A DNA stretch of 64,000 bases from Octopus sinensis (taxonomy: Eukaryota): assembly GCF_006345805.1 (NCBI RefSeq), contig NC_042999.1:68634001-68698000 (forward strand), in the 5' to 3' direction. Below, piece after piece: positions 4,148 to 62,249 of the stretch (position 1 is its first letter; each line of letters opens with the position of its first letter). The translations under genes were made by a program, and so were the position numbers. Below the pieces are notes generated by a model. It made no database searches, was not told the origin of the DNA, and saw only the letters and a list, made by a program, of their open reading frames with translations.

Positions 4148-4350
4148 AAGGCGGCGAGCTGGCAGAAACGTTAGCACGTCGGGCGAAATGCTTAGCAGTA
4201 TTTCGTCTGTCGCTACGTTCTGAGTTCAAATTCCGCCGAGGTCGACTTTGCCTTTCATCCTTTCGGGGTCGATTAAATAAGTACTAGTTGTATACTGGGA
4301 TCAATCTAGTCGACTTGCCCCTTCTCACAAAATTTCGGTCCTTGTGCCTA
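4148..4350 (+). mobile_element. tRNA-derived SINE group A (short-tail type)
   Basis: A-box-like TGGCAGAAACGTT and B-box-like GAGTTCAAATTCC; about 20 related copies in the window. Confidence 0.9.
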
Positions 4351-11618: not shown

Positions 11619-13101
11619 GTGCTAAAAACAAGATAATATGTATTAACACTTTACCCGTCCCAGTTATAAGTTACAGCTACAATATCCTTAACTGGACACT
11701 AAATGAACTAACCAAAATAGATAGGAAAACAAGAAAAATAATGACAGGATCTAGGATGCATCACCCAAAATCTGACATAGAAAGGCTATATATACAACGT
11801 ATAGAAGGTGGTAGAGGCCTTATACAGCTGGAAAACTATTATAAAATAACCACCACAGGACTGCAAAAATATCTACTTCAGAAGCAAGGAAAACTGTTAC
11901 AAATAGCGGCAAAACACGAGCAAAACAAAAAAACTGTTCTCAGTATCTAAGGAAGCTGACAAATACAAGCAAGAAATCATACCACCTAACAAATATGAAG
12001 AAGAAGAAGAAGAAGAAGAAGAAGAAGAAGAAGAAGAAGAAGAAGAAGAAGAAGAAGAAGAAGAAGAAGAAGAAGAAGAAGAAGAAGAAGAAGAAGAAGA
12101 AGAAGAATAAAAAGAAAAAGAAGAAGAAGAAGAAGAAGAAGAAGAAGAAGAAGAAGAAGAAGAAGAAAGAAGAAGAAGAAGAAGAAGAAGAAACAACAAA
12201 AGCTATGAAACAAATGAAATCCAAACTAAAACTAGAACAGCAACGGACCATGATAAAACGATGGCTAGAAAAGCCCCTTCATGGCAAATACTAAATGCAA
12301 AAGAAATAGACAAAGAAAAATCCCAGAAATGGTTGAGAAGCTCAGGACTCAAAGCAGGGACGGAGGGATTTTTAATTGCAGCACAAGACCAAAGCCTCCC
12401 CACCAGAAATTACCAAAAACATATAATGAAAAGAAACATAACAAGTAACTGCAGGATATGTGGAGATGGACAAGAAACAATAAATCATATTATCTCTGGC
12501 TGCCCAGTCCTGGCTAAGAAGGAATATATTCACAGAAACGACAGAGTTGGGACCTACATACACTGGAAGCTATGTCAACACTATGGAATAACAACAGAAA
12601 AAAGATGGTATAGGTACACACCAGAAAAGGTCACAGTAAACGAGAAAGCAACCATACTCTGGGATATGCCAATACACACAGATAGAGAAATTAAGGCCAA
12701 TAGGCTAGATGTAGTTGTCAGAGATGATGAAGAAAAAAATGCTTTCTAATTGATGTATCAATACCAGCAGACGACAACGTGTCTCTAAAAGAAATGGAGA
12801 AACTTTCAAAATGCAAAGACCTGGAAATAGAGATAGCTCGAATGTAGAATCTAAAAACAGAAACAATTCCTATCATAGGCGCATTAGGTATGATAAAAAA
12901 TATTCAGACAAATGCATAACAAAAACACCAGGACTTACAAACAAATATAACATACAGAAAATTGCACTATTGGGCACTGCACACATCCTACGCAAAACAC
13001 TTTCAATAAATCAGAGCATCACAACAAATCACAGCACATACCCAAGGCACACAGAGCTGCGCTCGGTAGTGAAGTGAAAGCACGCTATAAAAATAAAACT
13101 A

Positions 13102-13105
<4 letters not shown>
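11619..13105 (+). mobile_element. 5'-truncated RLE-type (R4/Dong-like) LINE with (AAT)n tail
   Basis: HHPKSDIERLY...GGRGL; TEGFLIAAQDQSL; zinc knuckle CRICGDGQETINHIISGCP; WDMPIHTDREIKANRLDVV; IQKIALLGTAHILRK. Ends in (AAT)n at 13106-13175. Dong-type elements are known to target TAA repeats. Confidence 0.9.
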
Positions 13106-13157
<52 letters not shown>

Positions 13158-13175
13158 TAATAATAATAATAATAG

Positions 13176-13270
13176 TAATTTTTTTATTAGCCACAGAGGT
13201 ATAGATGAGGAGGAGATCACAATGACCGGCAACAATTTGTGCGAAGATTTACATGAGGAGAAAGGACAGT
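13176..13270 (-). mobile_element. Very short Tx1-like 3' end
   Basis: Minus strand ...cctctgtggctaataaaaaa followed by (ATT)n. Confidence 0.4.
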
Positions 13271-16952: not shown

Positions 16953-17014
16953 CATTGTAACGTCATATTAGGTAAGAGTTTGAATGTTGTCAAATACGCA
17001 AGAAAATTCTTCTT

Positions 17015-17455
17015 ACTATAGGTTCAATGCCTTAAATTGGCGAGTGGGGACTCGATTACATCAACCCAATGCTCAACTGGTACTTATTTTTCGAGCCTGA
17101 AAGGAAGAAAACCAAAGTTGATCTCCGTGGAATTTGAACTCAGAACGTAAAGTCCGAAGAAATACCTATTTCTTTACTACCCACAAGGGGCTAAACACAG
17201 ACGGGACAAACAAGGACAGACAAACGGATTAACTTGATTATATCGACCCCAGTGCGTAACTGGTATTTATTTATCGACCCCGAAAGGATGAAAGGCAAAG
17301 TCGACCTCGGCGGAATTTGAACTCAGAACGTAACGGCAGACGAAATACGGCTAAGCATTTCGCCCGGCGTGCTAACGATTCTGCCAGCTCACCGAAGAAA
17401 TACCGCTAAGCATTTTGTTCGGCATGCTAACGACTCTGCCAGTTCATTACCTTTA
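17015..17455 (-). mobile_element. Nested SINE A: a 225-bp tailed copy (17167-17391) inside an older copy, 13-bp TSD
   Basis: ccgaagaaatacc at 17154-17166 and 17392-17404. Confidence 0.9.
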
Positions 17456-26686: not shown

Positions 26687-27222
26687 CATATTATATGCTT
26701 AATATCCTTTATTAAAAGATGGGTTGAATACCTCTAGAACTGTTGATTCAGCTGGAAAGCTACGGCCAGCATAATGTCGCGTGCTTACCACCCGGTTGTT
26801 TCGGCCAGCGCTGTTTCTCTGAAGGTGCACTTCACCGAATGTCTGAGGCCGCCGGTACGCATATTATATGCTTAATATCCTTTATTAAAAGATGGGTTGA
26901 ATACCTCTAGAACTGTTGATGGGGACGATTCAGCTGGAAAGCTACGGCCAACATAATGTCGCGTGCTTACCACCCGTTGTTTCGGCCAGCGCTGTTTCTC
27001 TGAAGGTGCACTTCACCGAATGTCTGAGACCGCCGGTACGCATATTATATGCTTAATATCCTTTATTAAAAGATGGGTTGAATACCTCTAGAACTGTTGA
27101 TGGGGACGATTCAGCTGGAAAGCTACGGCCAACATAATGTCGCGTGCTTACCACCCGGTTGCTTCGGCCAGCGCTGTTTCTCTGAAGGTGCATTTCACTG
27201 AATGTCTGAGGCCGCCGGTACG
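26687..27222. repeat. Tandem repeat, 182-bp unit x3 (173, 181 and 182 bp)
   Basis: catattatatgcttaatatcc begins at 26687, 26860 and 27041; the units are nearly identical. Confidence 0.95.
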
Positions 27223-31430: not shown

Positions 31431-31544
31431 GTTGACGCCCGAGAGATTTGGACTCAGCAGGTAAACAGTCGAAAGAATAACGTAAAACTTTCACTATTCT
31501 GCCAGCTTGCCACCCATAGTTTCAAGAAATAATTGATTTTAACA

Positions 31545-32225
31545 TTAGCACAAAGCCAGCAATATTTAGCGGGAGGTTTTAAGGATACCATCGACCGCTT
31601 CTTTATTTTATCGATTCCGAAAAGATGAAAGATAAAATTAATCTCAGCAGGATTCCAACTCAGAGAATGAAGAGACGGAAGAAATACCTATTTCTTTACT
31701 ACCCACAAGGGGCTAAACACAGAGGGGACAAACAAGGAGAGACACACGGATTAAGTCGATTATATCAACCCCAGTGCGTAACTGGTACTTAATTTATCGA
31801 CCCCGAAAGGATGAAAGGCAAAGTCGACCTCGTTGGAATTTGAACTCAGAACGTCGCGGCAGACGAAATACCGCTAAGCATTTCGCCCGGCATGCTACCG
31901 TTTCTGCCACCTCGACGGAAGAAATACCTATTTCTTTATTACCCACAAGGGGCTAAACATAGAGGGGACAAACAAGGACAGACATAGGTATTAAGTCGAT
32001 TACAGCGACCCCAGTGCGTAACTGGTTCTTAATTTATCGACCCCGAAAGGATGAAAGGTAAAGTCGACCTCGGCGGAATTTGAACTCACAACGTAACGGC
32101 AGACGAAATACCGCTAAAGCATTTCGCCCGACGTGCTAACGTTTCTACCAGCTCGACTGAAGAAATACCGCGATGCATTTTTTCTGACGCTCTCCTGATA
32201 AGAATTCTGCCAGCCCACCACCTTA
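31545..32225 (-). mobile_element. Old SINE A carrying two tandem tailed SINE A insertions (31689-31913 and 31929-32154)
   Basis: 15-bp repeat gac(g/t)gaagaaatacc at 31674, 31914 and 32155. Confidence 0.9.
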
Positions 32226-32670: not shown

Positions 32671-32984
32671 GTAACAGGAAATATCAATAACGATTTCTTT
32701 TGGAAATATCAATAATAGCGTCTCAAGTCGATTTGCATTTGTTCTCCACCGTTGTGATAAACATACTCCTCAAATGGAAGTTAAGTAAATATTTTCAGTA
32801 TTTTAAAATAGATTTTAAATAATAGTTCAAAGACTGTTTTAAAGAATACGAGTCTTAATGCGAACTTTAACATTTTCACGTTACCTTTTTTAGATTATCA
32901 TAAGTAATTTAAAGCTACTACTTTCGTTAGTTTTAAAAGATTTGATAAAAAACAAACTATAACAATGATATTAATTTTACTTTT

Positions 32985-33405
32985 AGGGCAGCGAGCTGGC
33001 AGAATCGTTAGCACGCCGGGCGAAATGCCTAGTGGTATTTCGTCTGCCGCTACGTTCTGAGTTCAAATTCCGCCGAGGTCGACTTTACCTTTCATCCTTT
33101 CGGGGTCGATAAATTAAGTACCAGTTACACACTGGGGTCGATATAATCGACGTAATACCTATGTCTGTCCTTGCTTGTCCCCTCTGTGTTTAGCCCCTTG
33201 TGGGTAATGAAGAAATAGGTATTTCGTCTGCCGTTACGTTCTGAGTTCAAATTCCGCCGAGGTTGACTTTGCCTTTCATTCCATCGGGGTCGATTAAATA
33301 AATACCAGTTACGCACTGGGGTCGATGCAATCGACTTAATCCGTTTGTCTGTCCTTGTTTCCATCTCCACTATGTTTGGCCCCCTGAGAGCAATAAAGAA
33401 ATAAA
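32985..33405 (+). mobile_element. SINE A tailed unit followed by a second unit beginning at ggtatttcgtc (33218)
   Basis: Head-body-tail, then body-tail; junction aagaaata|ggtatttcg. Confidence 0.9.
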
Positions 33406-33499
33406 TAATTTTACCTTTTAATAAACACTATTTGCAAAATAAACAAATATTTATAATTTCAACGTATAATCATAAAGAATACGACTAATTATTTGAACA

Positions 33500-54901: not shown

Positions 54902-54975
<74 letters not shown>

Positions 54976-57510
54976 TGTTTCTTTATTAGCCACACAGGGC
55001 TGCACACAGACAGGACAAATTACAAGGTAGAGCTTTTCTTTTGGAGGTAAAAAAGGGGATTTGGCTTTCGATCAAAAGGGATCGTAAAAGGAAAGAAAAC
55101 GGACAAAAAGGGGGGGGGGTAAAATTAAAAAAAAAGGGAGAGGAAAAAAAGGGAAAGGAAAAAAGGGAAAGGAAAAAATTGATCAATAGGGATTGTTATC
55201 ACAGAAATGTCAATATAAAGTGTAAAGGGGAGGACAGGTGAGGTTTACCCGTGGAAAGAAAAGCCTACGGAAAAGACCACGGTAACCTTGGTCAATGAAG
55301 TCACATGTTATATTTTTTTTTTTGCAAATAAGCAACTCTGTATTAATTTTTACGGTTCATAGGATCATAGTCAAGGTGGTTTCGTCATTCATACGTGTCA
55401 TCCTTGCTACATTCACCCATCTTTTTTAAAACATTCACTAGACAAAACTTGCCTCTCTACTCTCACTTTCCTCTTCAAGTGATACTTCAAGTTGTGAAGA
55501 TTGACCAGAGAGGAAAGTGTTTGTCTCCTCATCCTTCAGGCGCGTCCACCAGATACATTCTTTCGCCATAGCCACAAGTATGATAAAAAGAGCTCTTCCT
55601 TCCCGTTTGAAGGAAGGAGCGTGACGATATTAACGATAGACTCGGCTGATAAACCGACACGTCCCACACGTGACAGCAGTCGTTCGACATAAGCCCACAG
55701 GTCGGAGATTGTTGAACACTGCACGATTGCGTGCAGAACGGTTTCGTCGCTCTGCCCGCATCTCGGGCAGGTCGGCCCCGTGTTTCTCGAGCCATGCCTA
55801 TAGAGCTTATCCCGAACGGGCAGCGCTTCTCGGTAGCACCGCCAGGCCAGGGATCTCTGGAAGTTGTCCATAGGTCCCGGCCCGAAAGTCGTTTCAAACA
55901 TGCGGGTCAGGTATTCCTCGTCGACGCCCAGGTTTGCCCCAAGATCGTCGTCGTACCTCCCCTCCACTAATCCCCTATAGAATGCTTTGGTTGTGTTGAA
56001 GTCACACAAGGTCGACCCAGGACGGCATGCCCAGCCCTCCTTTTAACGGGTGTTGACAGCAAATGGATCGCCTGACCATCGGGACGCATCCTTTCCACCA
56101 GAAGCGGAAGAGAATGCGTTCTAGTTTGGTGATGGTAGGGTCGGAACAAGGTAACGACGGTCAGGCGGTAGTAGATGATGGACGCGATGTACGTGTTCGC
56201 CGCCTCCGCCCGACCTTTTAGGGACAGTTTCCTCTCGGCCCATTGCCGGGCGAGAGTGACCACCCTACTCGTTATCTCGTTCCAGTTCTTCTCCATTTGG
56301 AGGTCCGTACCGAACCAGACCCCGAGTAACTCAACCGGACCGTCCGTCCAGCGTCCCACGACGGAGGTACTGCTGGATGGCATGGGCTTGCTTCTCCAGG
56401 TGCCGAGCCGCAAGCCCACTAACTTTTCCCGGTTGATTTTTGCTCGTGTCACCGCTTCGTAGTCTTTCAGTGTCTCGCCGACCAGCTCGATGTGCTCGTG
56501 GCTTGACACTATGACGGTGACGTCGTCCGCGTATGCAGACACGCTTGTCCCGCATCCCAATTCTCGCGGGATGCCCCTCAGAGTCGCCAGCTTCCGCAGT
56601 AGTAGCTCGAGAGTCAATACGTATAGAAGAGACGAGAGGGGGCATCCCTGACGGACCGAACGTGCAATGTCGAAAGGTCTCAATAGATATCCATTTACGC
56701 GAACTACCGAACGGATGCCTCTGTACAAGGCCCCGGAAGACGGGACCGAAACCAGCCGCTCTCAGGACTGCCTCCAAGTATCGATGGTCTACCCTATCGA
56801 AGGCTTTCGATTGATCCAAATTGATCAGGGCCCCACCCATGCCAGGTTCCTTAACTACTCTGTCTATGATGTAGCGCATCAGATGGAGGTTGTCATGGAT
56901 ACTCCGGCCCGGCACGGCACAAGTTTGTGCGTTGTCGACCAGTTTCTCAATGACAAGCGTCAACCTCTTGGCTAACACCTTGGTCAAAATTTTCAGGTCT
57001 GCATTGAGCAGGGTGATTGGTCTAAAGTTATCTATAATGTCCCCCTTGTTTGGATCTTTCTTCAGCAGCGTTACGGCTCCTCGACTCACAAAACCGGTTA
57101 TGCTCCCGTTTTGCTGCCAGTTGCAGATTACCGCTGCCAAGACGTCTCCAAACAAGTCTGGCATACAATTGTAAAACTGGTAGGGCAGACCATCCAAACC
57201 CGGCGATTTGTCTCTGGAGCATTCTGCCATTGCGTCCCGCACATCCGCCGCCGTGATGGCACCCTCGCAGCACTCTGCCTCTCTTGCCGAGAGTCGTGGT
57301 AGGCTGTGCAGGTAGGCACTGAAGTCCACCCTGCGTTCACGCTCGCCACTCGTCCCGTACAGTCGGGCAAAGTGCCGCTGAAATGCCTCGCGCATCTTGC
57401 TGGGCTCGAGCAATTCGCGCCCTTGTTCATCTACCAGAGACCGAATGGTGGCTTTGTTGCCCTGCTGCGCCTCCGCCACCCGGGCCTCCCTCGCGGCTCC
57501 AATACCTTCC
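54976..57510 (-). mobile_element. 5'-truncated Tx1-clade LINE: RT, C-terminal zinc finger and 3' UTR, flanked by (GATA)n on both sides
   Basis: KSPGLDGLP; FRPITLLNADLKIL; LDQSKAFDRVDH; SVRQGCPLS; AYADDV; CPRCGQSDETVLHAIVQC. At least three frameshifts; no endonuclease domain. Ends gccctgtgtggctaataaagaaac. Confidence 0.95.
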
Positions 57511-57585
<75 letters not shown>

Positions 57586-58341
57586 TCACTTCGTGCACAT
57601 TGCATTTGAATAAGAGCTATTTGTAGTTTTATGCCTTGGAGACACGATAATTCAGGAGGTTCATAGAAGGCGCATTATGCTACTAACCAATCATTCAAAC
57701 TTAGGCTCTACTTGAATCCTGTGACATTGAATGATATTTATATCTCACTGGATACAATACATACTTTCTTGTTGATTACACCTCTAACGGAACAGTAGTC
57801 TATGTACTGTATTATATATATGCATGTATTTTGTACAGTGCGCTTACGATTTTTGCCAGCTCGTCGCCTTAAGAAATCTATATGTAATAGCATGTAAATA
57901 CTGCGTTAGAAAACCTCGATGATAGTAAAACTCGAAGGTTTCCCGTAGGACTCGAACAAACATCTCCTCTAGATGTGCCAGTCGTTCTTCCGAAGTATCT
58001 ATATGTGTTTGTGAGTGGGGAAACAAAGATGAATAACATAGATCCGAGAGCCCTGGGCTACGCAAATATCAAGCATTGATAACATTTATTTTGTTACTCA
58101 CGAACGTATGAATAATTTAAATAATTTAAATGAAATAATGAGACATAGGATTGGGTGAATCGTAATTTTGCTTGTCTTCAATGTAGAAGGAAACAAACAA
58201 AAACAAAAAAAACTATACTATTCACAGATTTAAACTAAGGGAGAGATACTAACCTACGAATTTATGGAATTAATTGAAATTATGTATGTAGGAAGATGTA
58301 TGTATATATATATACACACACACACACATGCATACATCTTG

Positions 58342-60736: not shown

Positions 60737-60970
60737 TATTTGTTTATTACCCACAAGGGGCTAAACATAGAGGGGACTAACAAGGACAGACATAGGTATT
60801 AAGTCGGTTACATCGACCCCAGTGCGTAACTGGTACTTAATTTATCGACCCCGAAAGGATGAAAGGCAAAGTCGACCTCGGCGGAATTTGAACCCATAAC
60901 GTAATGGCAGGCGAAATACGGCTACGCATTTCGCCCGACGGGCTAACGTTTCTGCCAGCTCGCCGCCTTA
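60737..60970 (-). mobile_element. Full-length tailed SINE A within TA-rich microsatellite
   Basis: Head aaggcggcgagctggcag; tail ...gtgggtaataaacaaata|ggtata. Confidence 0.92.
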
Positions 60971-61864
60971 TACATATATATATACATATATATATACATA
61001 TATATACATATATATATACATACATATATACATATATATACATACATACATATATATACATACATACATATATATACATATATATACATATATATACATA
61101 CATACATATATATACATATATATACATACATACATATATATACATATATATACACACATATATACATACATACATATATATACATATATATACACACACA
61201 TATACATATGTATATATACATACATATACATATATAAATACATATACATATATACATACATATATATACATATGTATACATACATATCTATATATATACA
61301 TACATATATATACATATATATATACATATATATACATACATACATATATACATACATATGTATATACATTACATACATATATACATACATATACACACAC
61401 AGACACACGTATTTGTATTAGTTGTTAAATATGTCATTTTTCCAATATACAAAATGAAATTCGATAGTAATGAATAAACATAAATACATCGTATATCTTC
61501 GGATATTCCACGATGTTCGTTTTATCTCCCTGATGATTCTGCGCGAATTTAATTCCTTCTTATTTCAATATACATGTATGTATGCGTGCATGCATATATG
61601 GATGTATGTACGTACGCATGAATGTGTGTGTGTGTATGTATGTATAAAATGGCGTATATATGCACAAACACACAAACATACATGTGCCTGTATGTATCTT
61701 GGGTATATCGTATGATATTCTAATCCATGCAGCATTGTATATTTTGGCTATAGCAAGAAATTTGAAGAATTTATGTAAATATGCATGCAGGTTCACATTT
61801 AAATATGCCATACTGCTACATGTAGATATTATATTCCGTATCTATTCATATTTCTTCTAATTCA

Positions 61865-62170
61865 AGGGGCGAGCTGGCAGAAACGTTGGCACGCCGGGCG
61901 AAATGCGTAGCCGTATTTCGTCTGCCGTTACGTTCTGAGTTCAAATTCCACCGAGGTCGACTTTGCCTTTCATCTTTTCGGGATCGATTAAATAAGTACC
62001 AGTTATGCACTGGGGTCGATGTAATCGACTTAATCCGTTTATCTGTCCTTGTTTGACCCCTCTGTGTTTAGCCCCTTGTGGGTAGTAAAGAAATAGGTAT
62101 TTCGTCTGTCTTTACGTTCTAAGTTCAAATTCCGCCGAGGTCGACTTTGCCTTTCATCCTTTCGGGGTTG
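61865..62170 (+). mobile_element. Tailed SINE A followed by a partial unit starting ggtatttcgtc (62096)
   Basis: Junction gtagtaaagaaata|ggtatttcgtctgtc. Confidence 0.92.
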
Positions 62171-62249
62171 AATATAATGCGTGTAAAAACGTATGCAATA
62201 GGTGTACGTACGTACGTGTATGGGTGTGTGTTTTTCCCATGTCTATCTA

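What the first reader, a model, noticed from the sequence alone, without database searches (positions are those of the whole stretch)
17154..17404. Self-targeting SINE: a tailed SINE A inserted at a fixed site inside an older SINE A, with a 13-bp TSD
Seen (SINE strand): host head ...cttagc-GGTATTTCTTCGG-[225-bp full SINE ending gtagtaaagaaata]-GGTATTTCTTCGG-actttacg host body. The duplicated 13-mer carries the host's private variant (cttcgg, versus cgtctg in the insert), so it is a genuine TSD and not a dimeric master element. The site lies between the host's A and B boxes. The same 3' junction recurs at 31688, 31928, 33218 and 62096, i.e. five times in 64 kb. Known: sequence-specific insertion is a property of Tx1-clade endonucleases, usually for rDNA, snRNA, tRNA arrays or microsatellites. 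Inference: a SINE subfamily mobilised by a site-specific Tx1 LINE that uses its own SINE family as a safe-haven target, disabling the host copy's Pol III promoter. I am not aware of a description of this in cephalopods but cannot check the literature or Repbase.
Basis: partly seen in the sequence, partly recalled or inferred. Interest (0 to 1): 0.82.

Follow-up and report, generated by a model that had tools for sequence, protein, structure and literature searches.

The report
SINE repeatedly inserted inside related SINEs
A young subfamily of a short retrotransposon (SINE) in this octopod-like genome has landed several times at one exact spot inside older related SINEs, because its helper LINE enzyme prefers a short DNA motif that the SINE family itself carries; this is a real and tidy case of target-preferring retrotransposition, but one with a published precedent.

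Summary
On the minus strand, a 225-bp SINE (17391-17167) sits inside an older SINE and is flanked by exact 13-bp repeats GGTATTTCTTCGG. Removing the insert and one repeat restores one colinear SINE.

The junction AAAGAAATA|GGTATTTC recurs four more times. At 32169-31674, two independent inserts from different sub-subfamilies (90.7% identical) sit in tandem in one site, separated by three copies of a 15-bp TSD. That is the signature of site-preferential retrotransposition.

Two junctions (33218, 62096) have no host head. The first lies within a composite flanked by its own outer TSD, so it probably moved as a unit.

A decayed L1-superfamily LINE (RVT_1 + zf-RVT) with the same 3' tail lies at 57510-54976, flanked on both sides by (TATC)n. 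An Argonauta relative carries the same tail. Assignment to the Tx1 clade could not be tested.

Related SINE families here and in Argonauta also have TSDs starting (N)TAT(TTC). The simplest reading is therefore a LINE-family target preference whose longest match sits in the abundant SINE head.

Site-specific SINEs with tandem inserts sandwiching a TSD are already published (SINEU/Tx1-Mar). The new element is that the target is the SINE's own family. Genome-wide confirmation was not possible with these tools.

The parts
17405..17445 (-). L1 host SINE head (older family), upstream of the insertion site
   Evidence: nhmmer hit 17394-17445, model 3-54. Colinear with the body after the empty-site join.
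17392..17404 (-). L1 5' TSD copy, GGTATTTCTTCGG
   Evidence: Exact match.
17167..17391 (-). L1 insert: 225-bp SINE subfamily A1 (sub-subfamily b, tail gggtagtaaagaaata), lacking about 6 nt of the full 5' end aaggcgg
17154..17166 (-). L1 3' TSD copy, GGTATTTCTTCGG
   Evidence: Exact match.
17000..17153 (-). L1 host SINE body and family-B-type tail
   Evidence: nhmmer hit 17050-17166, model 44-162; sequence.
32170..32216 (-). L2 host SINE head (strongly diverged family)
   Evidence: nhmmer hit 32155-32216. Empty-site join aligns to model 3-153, E 2.3e-18.
32155..32169 (-). L2 TSD copy 1, GGTATTTCTTCaGTC
31929..32154 (-). L2 insert a: A1 sub-subfamily a (acctatg ... gggtaataaagaaata)
31914..31928 (-). 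L2 TSD copy 2, GGTATTTCTTCcGTC
31689..31913 (-). L2 insert b: A1 sub-subfamily b (ccgtgtg ... gggtagtaaagaaata). It is 90.7% identical to insert a, no closer than random A1 pairs (88-93%).
31674..31688 (-). L2 TSD copy 3, GGTATTTCTTCcGTC
31540..31673 (-). L2 host SINE body and family-C-type tail
   Evidence: nhmmer hit 31584-31688, model 44-158; sequence.
32972..32985 (+). L3 outer TSD, 5' copy: TAATTTTACTTTTA
32986..33217 (+). L3 full-length A1 copy (sub-subfamily a) with complete 5' end gggcagcgag; no SINE head upstream
33218..33403 (+). L3 3' partner: SINE positions 44-227 with the variant tail ccctgagagcaataaagaaata (A2), starting exactly at GGTATTTC
33406..33420 (+). L3 outer TSD, 3' copy: TAATTTTACCTTTTA
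   Evidence: 14/15 with one indel. A match this good is seen in 3.5% of random window pairs.
61864..62095 (+). L4 full-length A1 copy (sub-subfamily b). No SINE head upstream; the 15 nt before it are TATTTCTTCTAATTC.
62096..62174 (+). L4 3' partner: SINE positions 44-122 only, then unrelated sequence
60737..60964 (-). Sixth full A1 copy, not nested, in a TA/TG microsatellite; its 3' flank also starts GGTAT(atatat)
54976..57510 (-). Putative partner LINE: 5'-truncated, frameshifted, with RVT_1 (two ORF pieces) and zf-RVT. Its 3' tail ctgtgtggctaataaagaaaca is shared with the SINE. Pure (TATC)n arrays flank it at 57585-57511 and 54975-54902.

Best explanation
Subfamily 'A1' is a ~230-bp SINE. 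It has a box-A/box-B-like head, a conserved core and a ~50-nt LINE-derived tail ending GGGTA(A/G)TAAAGAAATA. It is copied by target-primed reverse transcription by an L1-superfamily LINE (endonuclease, RT and a C-terminal zinc-binding domain) that carries the same tail.

The LINE machinery nicks the bottom strand at 5'-gc^GGTATTTC(T/G)TC-3' (or two bases further, ^TATTTC). It nicks the top strand 11-15 nt downstream. This produces the 13-15-bp duplications.

That motif is the 3' arm of the hairpin between box A and box B of the SINE family's own head. SINEs are very abundant, so almost all long matches to the motif lie inside SINEs. New A1 copies therefore accumulate in sense orientation at position 43/44 of older SINEs. 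Sometimes they hit the same site twice, giving a tandem pair with a TSD sandwich.

A nested copy can then be transcribed from the insert's own promoter through the host's remaining body and tail, and be re-mobilised as a composite (locus 32986-33403).

Shown: the insertions, the TSDs, recurrence of the site, independence of the events, the shared tail, and the LINE's domain type.

Inferred: which protein makes the nick; the exact nick position; whether the endonuclease alone or also the RNA 3' end sets the specificity; and how the composite arose.
For: - Exact 13-bp TSD, and colinear hosts after the empty-site join.
- Three copies of a 15-bp TSD around two tandem inserts. These inserts differ at sub-subfamily diagnostic sites and are only 90.7% identical.
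- Hosts of L1 and L2 are different older families with different flanks.
- All six A1 copies have GGTAT at the 3' flank, five of them at the same SINE position and in the same orientation.
- Four of eight SINE-internal GGTATTTC sites are occupied. Three of the four empty ones lie in the young inserts themselves.
- SINE copies whose site reads AGTAT, GGCAT or CGTAT are all empty.
- The 3' TSD copies keep the host's T at TATTTCtTC, so priming started within 8 nt of the junction.
- A LINE with RVT_1 + zf-RVT and the same tail is in the window. Its relatives have Exo_endo_phos + RVT_1 + zf-RVT. The best solved relative is human L1 ORF2p at 7e-43, against R2 at 1e-22.
- An Argonauta homologue (72% identity) ends in ggcccttgtggctaataaagaaat.
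- The target preference is family-wide. An older SINE at 32662-32498 has TSD TATTTCCTGT.... An Argonauta SINE has the 13-bp TSD CTATTTCAAGGAA, and 5 of 6 Argonauta flanks start CTAT.
- TSD lengths of 13-16 bp are consistent across all of these.
- Published precedent for exactly this pattern: PMC4494074.
Against: - There are only 64 kb and six A1 copies, and no genome-wide data.
- Two of the five junctions lack a host head and an inner TSD.
- The one LINE copy lies in (TATC)n, not in the SINE site, so a shared target for LINE and SINE is not shown.
- All four GGTATTTC sites that are not at that SINE position are empty. This hints that more than the 8-mer matters.
- An A1-type copy on an external contig has the flank AATATATT.
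- The boundaries of older SINE tails were set by eye, so the 'TAT-first' flank pattern for those is only suggestive.
Confidence: 0.7

Rival explanations
1. RNA-guided homing. The A1 master copies are themselves nested at position 44 of a SINE. Pol III reads past ...AAAGAAATA (A1 contains no TTTT) into GGUAUUUCGUC.... This 3' extension base-pairs with the nicked bottom strand of other SINE heads and fixes the register. In this model the specificity comes mainly from the template RNA, as with read-through transcripts of R1/R2-type elements, rather than from the endonuclease.
For: - The A1 consensus has no T4 run (consensus).
- The non-nested copy at 60737 also carries GG(TAT) after the tail. Its best flank match (GTATATATATAT...) leaves one extra G that could be transduced.
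- Only A1 shows the GG. Sister families with other tails show just TAT-first flanks.
- PMC4494074 notes that cotranscription with the target can strengthen target-specific integration.
Against: - The 3' TSD copies in L1 and L2 carry the host variant at base 9 (T, not the A1 G). Any RNA-target pairing was therefore at most 8 nt.
- TSD lengths are narrow and normal (13-15 bp), which implies a precisely placed nick.
- An external A1-type copy has no GG flank.
- The microsatellite context at 60737 makes the 'extra G' unreliable.
Confidence: 0.2
2. Composite (dimeric) element amplified as a unit. The junction was made once or a few times, and the A1 + SINE(44-227) composite then spread by retrotransposition. 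On this view the recurrence reflects copying, not repeated targeting.
For: - Locus 32986-33403 has no host head and no inner TSD. It is flanked by an outer TSD TAATTTTAC(C)TTTTA that sits flush with the full-length 5' end and lies 2 nt after the 3' tail.
- Locus 61864-62174 also lacks a host head.
Against: - L1 and L2 have host heads, host-specific inner TSDs and hosts from different families.
- The A1 halves of the two head-less loci belong to different sub-subfamilies, and their 3' halves differ (GCCGTTACG against GTCTTTACG). They are therefore not copies of one master.
- This model can only be a secondary process acting on top of real nested insertions.
Confidence: 0.05
3. Reverse-transcriptase template switching. 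While copying a SINE RNA, the RT stalls at the hairpin or a modified base near position 44 and jumps to the 3' end of a second SINE RNA. This would give chimeric retrocopies like the U6-L1 chimeras of mammals (own knowledge).
For: - The structure of locus 32986-33403 fits: a full-length 5' partner, a 5'-truncated 3' partner, an outer TSD and no inner TSD.
- The site is at the loop/3'-arm boundary of a predicted 12-bp hairpin.
Against: - It cannot produce host heads plus duplicated host sequence (L1, L2).
- Isolated SINE copies that seem to start at position 44-47 (21219, 39763, 53690) turn out to be internally deleted copies with remnants of heads, not truncations. There is therefore no independent sign of an RT stop there.
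- The junction is identical to that of the bona fide insertions, which would be a coincidence under this model.
Confidence: 0.04
4. Chance nesting or an assembly artefact in a repeat-rich region.
For: The window is extremely rich in SINEs and microsatellites.
Against: - Same nucleotide position, same orientation and matching TSDs five times, with p well below 1e-3 under any simple model.
- Mis-assembly would not create host-specific direct repeats or colinear empty sites.
Confidence: 0.01

Closest known systems
SINEU families mobilised by Tx1-Mar LINEs in crocodilians (Kojima 2015, PMC4494074)
   Same: - A SINE inserts at one position of another abundant repeat family.
- It has a constant ~16-bp TSD.
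- Tandem insertions are 'sandwiching a TSD' and are interpreted as sequential hits.
- The partner is an L1-group (Tx1) LINE.
- Master copies sit in the target and can pick up flanking sequence.
   Different: - The target there is a Mariner DNA transposon, and the heads derive from snRNA. Here the target is the head of the SINE's own family or superfamily.
- There the LINEs were shown to share the target. Here the single LINE copy is in (TATC)n.
- Clade membership is shown there by RT phylogeny and is not tested here.
Microsatellite- and small-RNA-gene-targeting Tx1-clade LINEs (Kibi, Koshi, Keno, as summarised in PMC4494074)
   Same: - APE-type LINEs with sequence-specific nicking.
- The in-window LINE copy is embedded between two (TATC)n arrays, as expected for a microsatellite-inserting element.
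   Different: - There is only one LINE copy, so specificity is not established.
- The SINE's site is not a microsatellite.
- The clade is unresolved.
Alu insertion hot spots inside older Alus, caused by the L1 endonuclease consensus in A-rich regions (own knowledge, not checked here)
   Same: A SINE family carries its partner LINE's preferred nick site. Because it is abundant, it becomes a frequent target of its own family.
   Different: The L1 preference (TT/AAAA) is short and the hits are spread over A-rich stretches. Here the hits are at a single nucleotide position defined by at least 8 bases, with near-constant TSDs.
R1/R2-type precise integration aided by read-through target sequence at the RNA 3' end (cited within PMC4494074: Eickbush 2000, Fujimoto 2004)
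   Same: It offers a possible way for a master copy nested in the target to give RNAs that anneal to the same site elsewhere.
   Different: It is not demonstrated here. The host-variant bases in the 3' TSD copies limit any such pairing to 8 nt or fewer.
CORE-SINEs of octopus (OR1/OR2, Ohshima and Okada 1994, cited in PMC4824008 and PMC4758252)
   Same: They are tRNA-type SINEs of octopus with a conserved central domain. From memory, the core here (ctttgcctttcatcctttcggggtcgataaattaagtaccag) resembles the CORE/MIR domain.
   Different: No reference sequence was available, so identity with OR1/OR2 or CORE membership was not tested.

Membership tests
Target-site-specific non-LTR retrotransposition (SINE + L1/Tx1-type LINE) | Independent insertions at the same nucleotide of a repeated target, in the same orientation | tested here: met
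   Five junctions at SINE model position 43/44, all in sense orientation. Three have host heads and TSDs, in two different hosts.
Target-site-specific non-LTR retrotransposition (SINE + L1/Tx1-type LINE) | Constant TSD sequence and length | tested here: met
   GGTATTTCTTCGG (13 bp) and GGTATTTCTTCNGTC (14-15 bp, three copies).
Target-site-specific non-LTR retrotransposition (SINE + L1/Tx1-type LINE) | Tandem arrays of inserts separated by one TSD copy, made by sequential hits | tested here: met
   Region 32169-31674: two inserts 90.7% identical, of different sub-subfamilies, with three TSD copies.
Target-site-specific non-LTR retrotransposition (SINE + L1/Tx1-type LINE) | SINE and LINE share the 3' tail | tested here: met
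   The tail motif occurs at 54976-54997 downstream of the RVT_1/zf-RVT ORFs. The same motif ends the Argonauta homologue.
Target-site-specific non-LTR retrotransposition (SINE + L1/Tx1-type LINE) | The partner LINE itself occupies the same target | tested here: not met
   The only LINE copy with this tail lies between (TATC)n arrays. Two Argonauta LINE 3' ends have the flanks TTAATTAC and CTATTTTT. With n=1-3 this is weak evidence.
Target-site-specific non-LTR retrotransposition (SINE + L1/Tx1-type LINE) | A majority of copies genome-wide are at the target | not testable with these tools
   No cephalopod genome is in the DNA collections. The pseudo-protein search gave 1 hit and the metagenome scans gave 0. 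One external A1-type copy has a different flank.
Tx1 clade of the L1 group | RT-domain phylogeny places the LINE with Tx1 references | not testable with these tools
   No Tx1 reference sequences were available. The hits carry no informative names.
Tx1 clade of the L1 group | L1-group architecture: APE endonuclease, RT, C-terminal zinc-binding motif | tested here: met
   RVT_1 + zf-RVT in the window copy. Exo_endo_phos + RVT_1 + zf-RVT in ~1150-aa relatives. Human L1 ORF2p is the best PDB match at 7e-43. A repeat survey of O. vulgaris lists L1-Tx1 as its only L1-group superfamily among recently active LINEs.
tRNA-derived SINE (type 2 Pol III promoter) | Box A and box B motifs at tRNA-like spacing | tested here: inconclusive
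   TTAGCACGCCGGG and GAGTTCAAATTCC are present and about 50 nt apart (read from the sequence). They were judged against consensus boxes from established knowledge only.
tRNA-derived SINE (type 2 Pol III promoter) | Detectable tRNA homology or cloverleaf | tested here: not met
   ARAGORN found 0 genes. Rfam gave no hit at gathering score, nor at E<=10 on the head alone.
Composite/dimeric SINE amplified as a unit | The same two-part element flanked by an outer TSD, with no inner TSD and no host head | tested here: inconclusive
   Met for 32986-33403. Not met for L1 and L2, which have inner TSDs and host heads. Unresolved for 61864-62174.
Template-switch chimeric retrocopy (U6-L1 type) | No duplication of the 3' partner's sequence at the internal junction | tested here: not met
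   L1 and L2 have 13-15-bp duplications of host sequence at the internal junction. Only L3 and L4 would be compatible.

The most novel reading that the evidence does not exclude
A SINE subfamily has become a homing element for its own family. Master copies nested in the anticodon-arm-like hairpin of older SINE heads emit read-through RNAs whose 3' extension guides integration into the same nucleotide of other SINE heads. This would make a self-perpetuating SINE-in-SINE cycle. It would silence old copies, keep new insertions harmless, and continually generate new composite SINE families such as the A1+A2 unit at 32986-33403.
Probability: 0.2. Interest if true: 0.65.

Novelty: new variant of a known kind. 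Interest (0 to 1): 0.45.

Why it matters
If it holds genome-wide, this would be a clear invertebrate example of a SINE/LINE pair with single-nucleotide target choice. It would also, as far as the searched literature shows, be the first where the preferred target lies inside the SINE's own family.

SINEs make up roughly a tenth of octopus genomes. Such self-nesting would affect several things:
- How SINE ages and copy numbers are estimated.
- How repeat libraries split 'families'. Composites and tandem pairs can be mistaken for new subfamilies, as happened with SINEU-3B.
- How much insertional load new SINE bursts impose on genes.

It also offers a simple substrate, a 11-15-nt oligo, for testing what sets specificity in an L1-group endonuclease.

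Tried and rejected
- tRNA identity of the head. ARAGORN and Rfam (gathering score, and E<=10 on the head alone) found nothing. The site could therefore not be mapped onto a cloverleaf.
- More DNA from the same genome. I searched a 73-aa pseudo-protein translated across the consensus junction (one 543-bp contig). I ran two exact scans of JGI metagenome contigs (none) and one of prokaryote genomes (a chance hit in an archaeon). None gave usable octopod DNA.
- Clade of the LINE. Two homologue searches returned no informative names. Only the L1-superfamily level could be shown.
- An RT stop at position 44. SINE hits that seemed to begin at 44-47 (21219, 39763, 53690) proved to be internally deleted copies, so this idea was dropped.
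- Tail-to-site RNA pairing. GAAAUA is the reverse complement of UAUUUC, but folding gives no such pairing. The tail pairs elsewhere or stays open. Older families with other tails also use TATTTC-first targets, so the palindrome across the junction is probably incidental.
- An outer TSD for locus 61864-62174. None was found within 1.9 kb.
- The first two attempts to read L002 in a script failed because the file was absent. The locus was read with get_sequence instead.
Full report
**1. What is at the coordinates**

Read on the minus strand, the flagged interval is:
- a host head ending ...aaaatgcttagc;
- GGTATTTCTTCGG (17404-17392);
- a 225-bp SINE (17391-17167) that starts tgagctggcagaatcg and ends ccccttgtgggtagtaaagaaata;
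- GGTATTTCTTCGG again (17166-17154);
- actttacgttctgagttcaaattcc..., the rest of the host.

The 13-mer occurs only at these two places in the window. I joined the head, one copy of the repeat and the body in a script. The result is one ungapped alignment to a profile of the SINE family, model positions 3-162, E 4.9e-39. This is a bona fide insertion with a target-site duplication (TSD) into a pre-existing SINE.

**2. The repeat landscape**

A profile built from seven full-length copies finds 33 segments, about 27 elements. They cover 4.5 kb, or 7% of the window. They share a head and a central core but carry different 3' modules.

Six copies form a young subfamily that I call A1:
- Tail: ...gtttagccccttgtgggta(a/g)taaagaaata.
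- Pairwise identity: 88-93%.
- Sub-subfamily a (aatacctatg ... gtaat): 32154, 32993, 60961.
- Sub-subfamily b (aatccgt.t. ... gtagt): 17391, 31913, 61871 (alignment).

Older families have other tails. The full-length 5' end is (a)aggcggcgagctgg, seen at 4155, 16939, 60961, 32986 and 61864.

No tRNA homology is detectable by ARAGORN or Rfam. 'tRNA-derived' therefore rests only on the box-A-like TTAGCACGCCGGG and the box-B-like GAGTTCAAATTCC. The insertion site lies between these two motifs. In a fold of the consensus it sits at the loop/3'-arm boundary of a 12-bp hairpin, CGGGCGAAATGC / GTATTTCGTCTG.

**3. Recurrence of the junction**

AAAGAAATA|GGTATTTC is found exactly at four places, and with one tail substitution at a fifth.

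- *Locus L2 (32216-31540, minus).* This locus is the most informative. A strongly diverged host SINE with its own head carries GGTATTTCTTCaGTC, an A1a copy, GGTATTTCTTCcGTC, an A1b copy, GGTATTTCTTCcGTC, and then the host body.
  - The empty-site join again gives one colinear SINE, model 3-153, E 2.3e-18.
  - The two inserts are 90.7% identical. That is no closer than random A1 pairs, and they differ at the sub-subfamily diagnostic positions.
  - They are therefore two sequential hits in the same site with the same stagger, not a tandem duplication.
- *Locus L3 (32986-33403, plus).* A full-length A1a copy is followed directly by positions 44-227 of a SINE with a variant tail (A2). There is no host head and no inner TSD. 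The whole unit is flanked by TAATTTTAC(C)TTTTA. A match this good is seen in 3.5% of random pairs in this low-complexity window. Here it is also flush with the unit's 5' end and lies 2 nt after its 3' tail.
- *Locus L4 (61864-62174, plus).* A full-length A1b copy is followed by SINE positions 44-122 and then unrelated DNA. There is no head upstream. The 15 nt before it read TATTTCTTCTAATTC. That looks like a 5' TSD copy beginning with the target motif, but no 3' partner was found. This locus is unresolved.
- *The sixth A1 copy (60964-60737, minus).* It lies in a TA/TG microsatellite, and its 3' flank also begins GGTAT.

**4. Is it more than chance?**

- All six A1 copies have GGTAT at the flank. 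Five are at one nucleotide position of another SINE, in the same orientation.
- With SINEs at 7% of the sequence, five of six copies falling anywhere in a SINE has p of about 1e-5 (my arithmetic).
- If the machinery recognised only GGTAT (93 sites, 21 in SINEs) or only TATTTC (104 sites, 23 in SINEs), p would still be about 0.003 (counts).
- GGTATTTC has 15 occurrences. Eleven of them are SINE position 44 or TSD copies of it. The effective recognition is therefore about 8 bases or more.
- Counting pre-insertion sites, four of eight SINE-internal GGTATTTC sites are occupied. Three of the four empty ones lie in the young inserts themselves.
- SINE copies whose site reads AGTATTTC, GGCATTTC or CGTATTTC are all empty.
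- The four GGTATTTC sites that are not at that SINE position are also empty.

**5. The partner LINE**

- The only tail-only match (54976-55027, minus) is the 3' end of a decayed, 5'-truncated LINE. Its ORF pieces carry RVT_1 (two pieces) and zf-RVT.
- Its tail is ctgtgtggctaataaagaaaca. It sits between two perfectly pure (TATC)n arrays, at 57585-57511 and 54975-54902.
- Its closest named relatives are from the octopod Argonauta hians, at 53-72% identity. This supports a cephalopod origin for the window.
- The Argonauta protein matches human L1 ORF2p far better than R2 proteins, 7e-43 against 1e-22. Full-length relatives have Exo_endo_phos + RVT_1 + zf-RVT. The LINE is therefore of the L1 group.
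- The Tx1 clade itself could not be tested for lack of references. A repeat survey of O. vulgaris lists L1-Tx1 as the only L1-group superfamily among recently active LINEs.
- The Argonauta LINE ends ...ggcccttgtggctaataaagaaat. Argonauta SINEs in the same 14-kb locus carry the same tail. The tail is a conserved recognition module of this LINE lineage.

**6. Target preference is family-wide**

- An older window SINE (32662-32498) has the TSD TATTTCCTGT(T/A)A(C/T)T.
- Other old copies have flanks TTATTTCTTG, TATTTTTAAGG and TATTACC.
- One Argonauta SINE has the 13-bp TSD CTATTTCAAGGAA. Five of six Argonauta flanks start CTAT.
- TSDs are 13-16 bp throughout.

This argues that the endonuclease of this LINE lineage prefers to nick just 5' of TAT(TTC). 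A1 shows the sharpest version of this, GGTATTTC(T/G)TC. The boundaries of the old tails were set by eye, so this part is suggestive rather than proven.

**7. Mechanism**

The best-supported reading is ordinary target-primed reverse transcription with a sequence-preferring endonuclease. Its best genomic match happens to be embedded in the conserved head of the very abundant SINE family that it mobilises.

The 3' TSD copies in L1 and L2 keep the host's T at base 9 (TATTTCtTC), whereas A1 has G. cDNA priming therefore began within 8 nt of the junction. This fixes the nick at the site. It also limits the alternative in which read-through RNA from a nested master guides integration by homology.

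That alternative is not excluded. A1 has no T4 terminator, and only A1 shows the extra GG. I give it about 0.2.

The head-less loci are best explained as nested copies re-mobilised from the insert's promoter through the host's body and tail. L3 has the expected outer TSD. RT template switching would give the same structure. But it needs a coincidental stop at the very nucleotide used by the real insertions, and I found no independent sign of such a stop.

The tail end GAAATA is the reverse complement of the target's TATTTC. Folding gives no tail-to-site pairing, and families with other tails use the same target. I therefore treat that palindrome as incidental.

**8. Comparison with what is known**

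Kojima (2015, PMC4494074) described the same phenomenology. Crocodilian SINEU families are mobilised by Tx1-Mar LINEs. About 90% of SINEU-3 copies lie at one site of a Mariner transposon with a fixed 16-bp TSD. Tandem copies 'sandwiching a TSD' were first mistaken for a subfamily. The same paper summarises Tx1-clade LINEs that target microsatellites and snRNA genes.

What differs here is the target, which is the SINE's own family. That makes new copies carriers of new target sites and yields composites.

Full-text searches found no description of this for cephalopods. Repbase could not be consulted. I rate it a new variant of a known kind.

**9. Verdict**

Site-preferential insertion by an L1/Tx1-type LINE is well supported.
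- A dedicated 'self-targeting safe haven' and Tx1 membership are not shown.
- Two of the five junctions are probably secondary copies.
- Interest is moderate (0.45). The finding is real, clean and cheaply testable genome-wide, but the mechanism class is established.

Noticed in passing
window 54902-57585: The decayed L1-group LINE (57510-54976, minus) is bracketed by two perfectly pure (TATC)n arrays of about 75 bp each. This is what a microsatellite-targeting LINE would look like. It is a single case.
   Followed up: partly
window 12261-13198: A different plus-strand LINE (zf-RVT ORF 12261-12749) ends in (AAT)n at 13105-13179. From the other side, a minus-strand 3' end with the octopod LINE tail motif (ctctgtggctaataaaaaaatt, 13198-13177) abuts the same array. 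One element appears to have inserted into the other's microsatellite tail.
   Followed up: partly
window 4155-4344: This SINE copy has an A-type head and core (about 90% identical to A1 over 156 nt) but a family-B 3' tail (…aaaatttcggtccttgtgcctagagaagaaaag). This suggests modular tail exchange between SINE families.
   Followed up: no
window 61849-61863: TATTTCTTCTAATTC directly abuts the full-length 5' end of the A1 copy at 61864. It begins with the target motif and has TSD length, but no matching 3' copy exists. The 3' partner SINE is also cut off at model position 122. The history of this locus is unexplained.
   Followed up: partly
window 32662-31540 and 32986-33403: About 2 kb holds three older SINEs in head-to-tail series, the doubly hit host, and the composite on the opposite strand. 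This is a local SINE pile-up.
   Followed up: no
L002 10820-11320 (Argonauta hians): Two Argonauta SINEs lie in tandem. Each ends taatagagaaat and each is followed by CTATAG(G/A)(C/T)CAGCAC. This may be the same 'tandem with repeated target' pattern in another octopod.
   Followed up: partly
protein P0125: A 466-aa fragment, 61% identical to the Argonauta LINE, is labelled in NCBI as a zinc-binding protein of a Herbaspirillum MAG. This is most likely host (cephalopod) contamination of a metagenome bin.
   Followed up: no
L001 (ENA metagenome contig, 543 bp): The contig carries an A1-type SINE (tail cctcttgtgggtaataacgaaata) with the 3' flank AATATATTAAG rather than GGTAT. It is also host DNA in a metagenome assembly.
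   Followed up: partly
window 26687-27222: A 181-bp unit is repeated three times at 95% identity. It is unrelated to the SINEs.
   Followed up: no
window 57830-57870 (minus): A short SINE head fragment (aaggcgacgagctggcaaaaatcgtaagcgcac) was missed by the profile search. It breaks off into AT-rich sequence.
   Followed up: no
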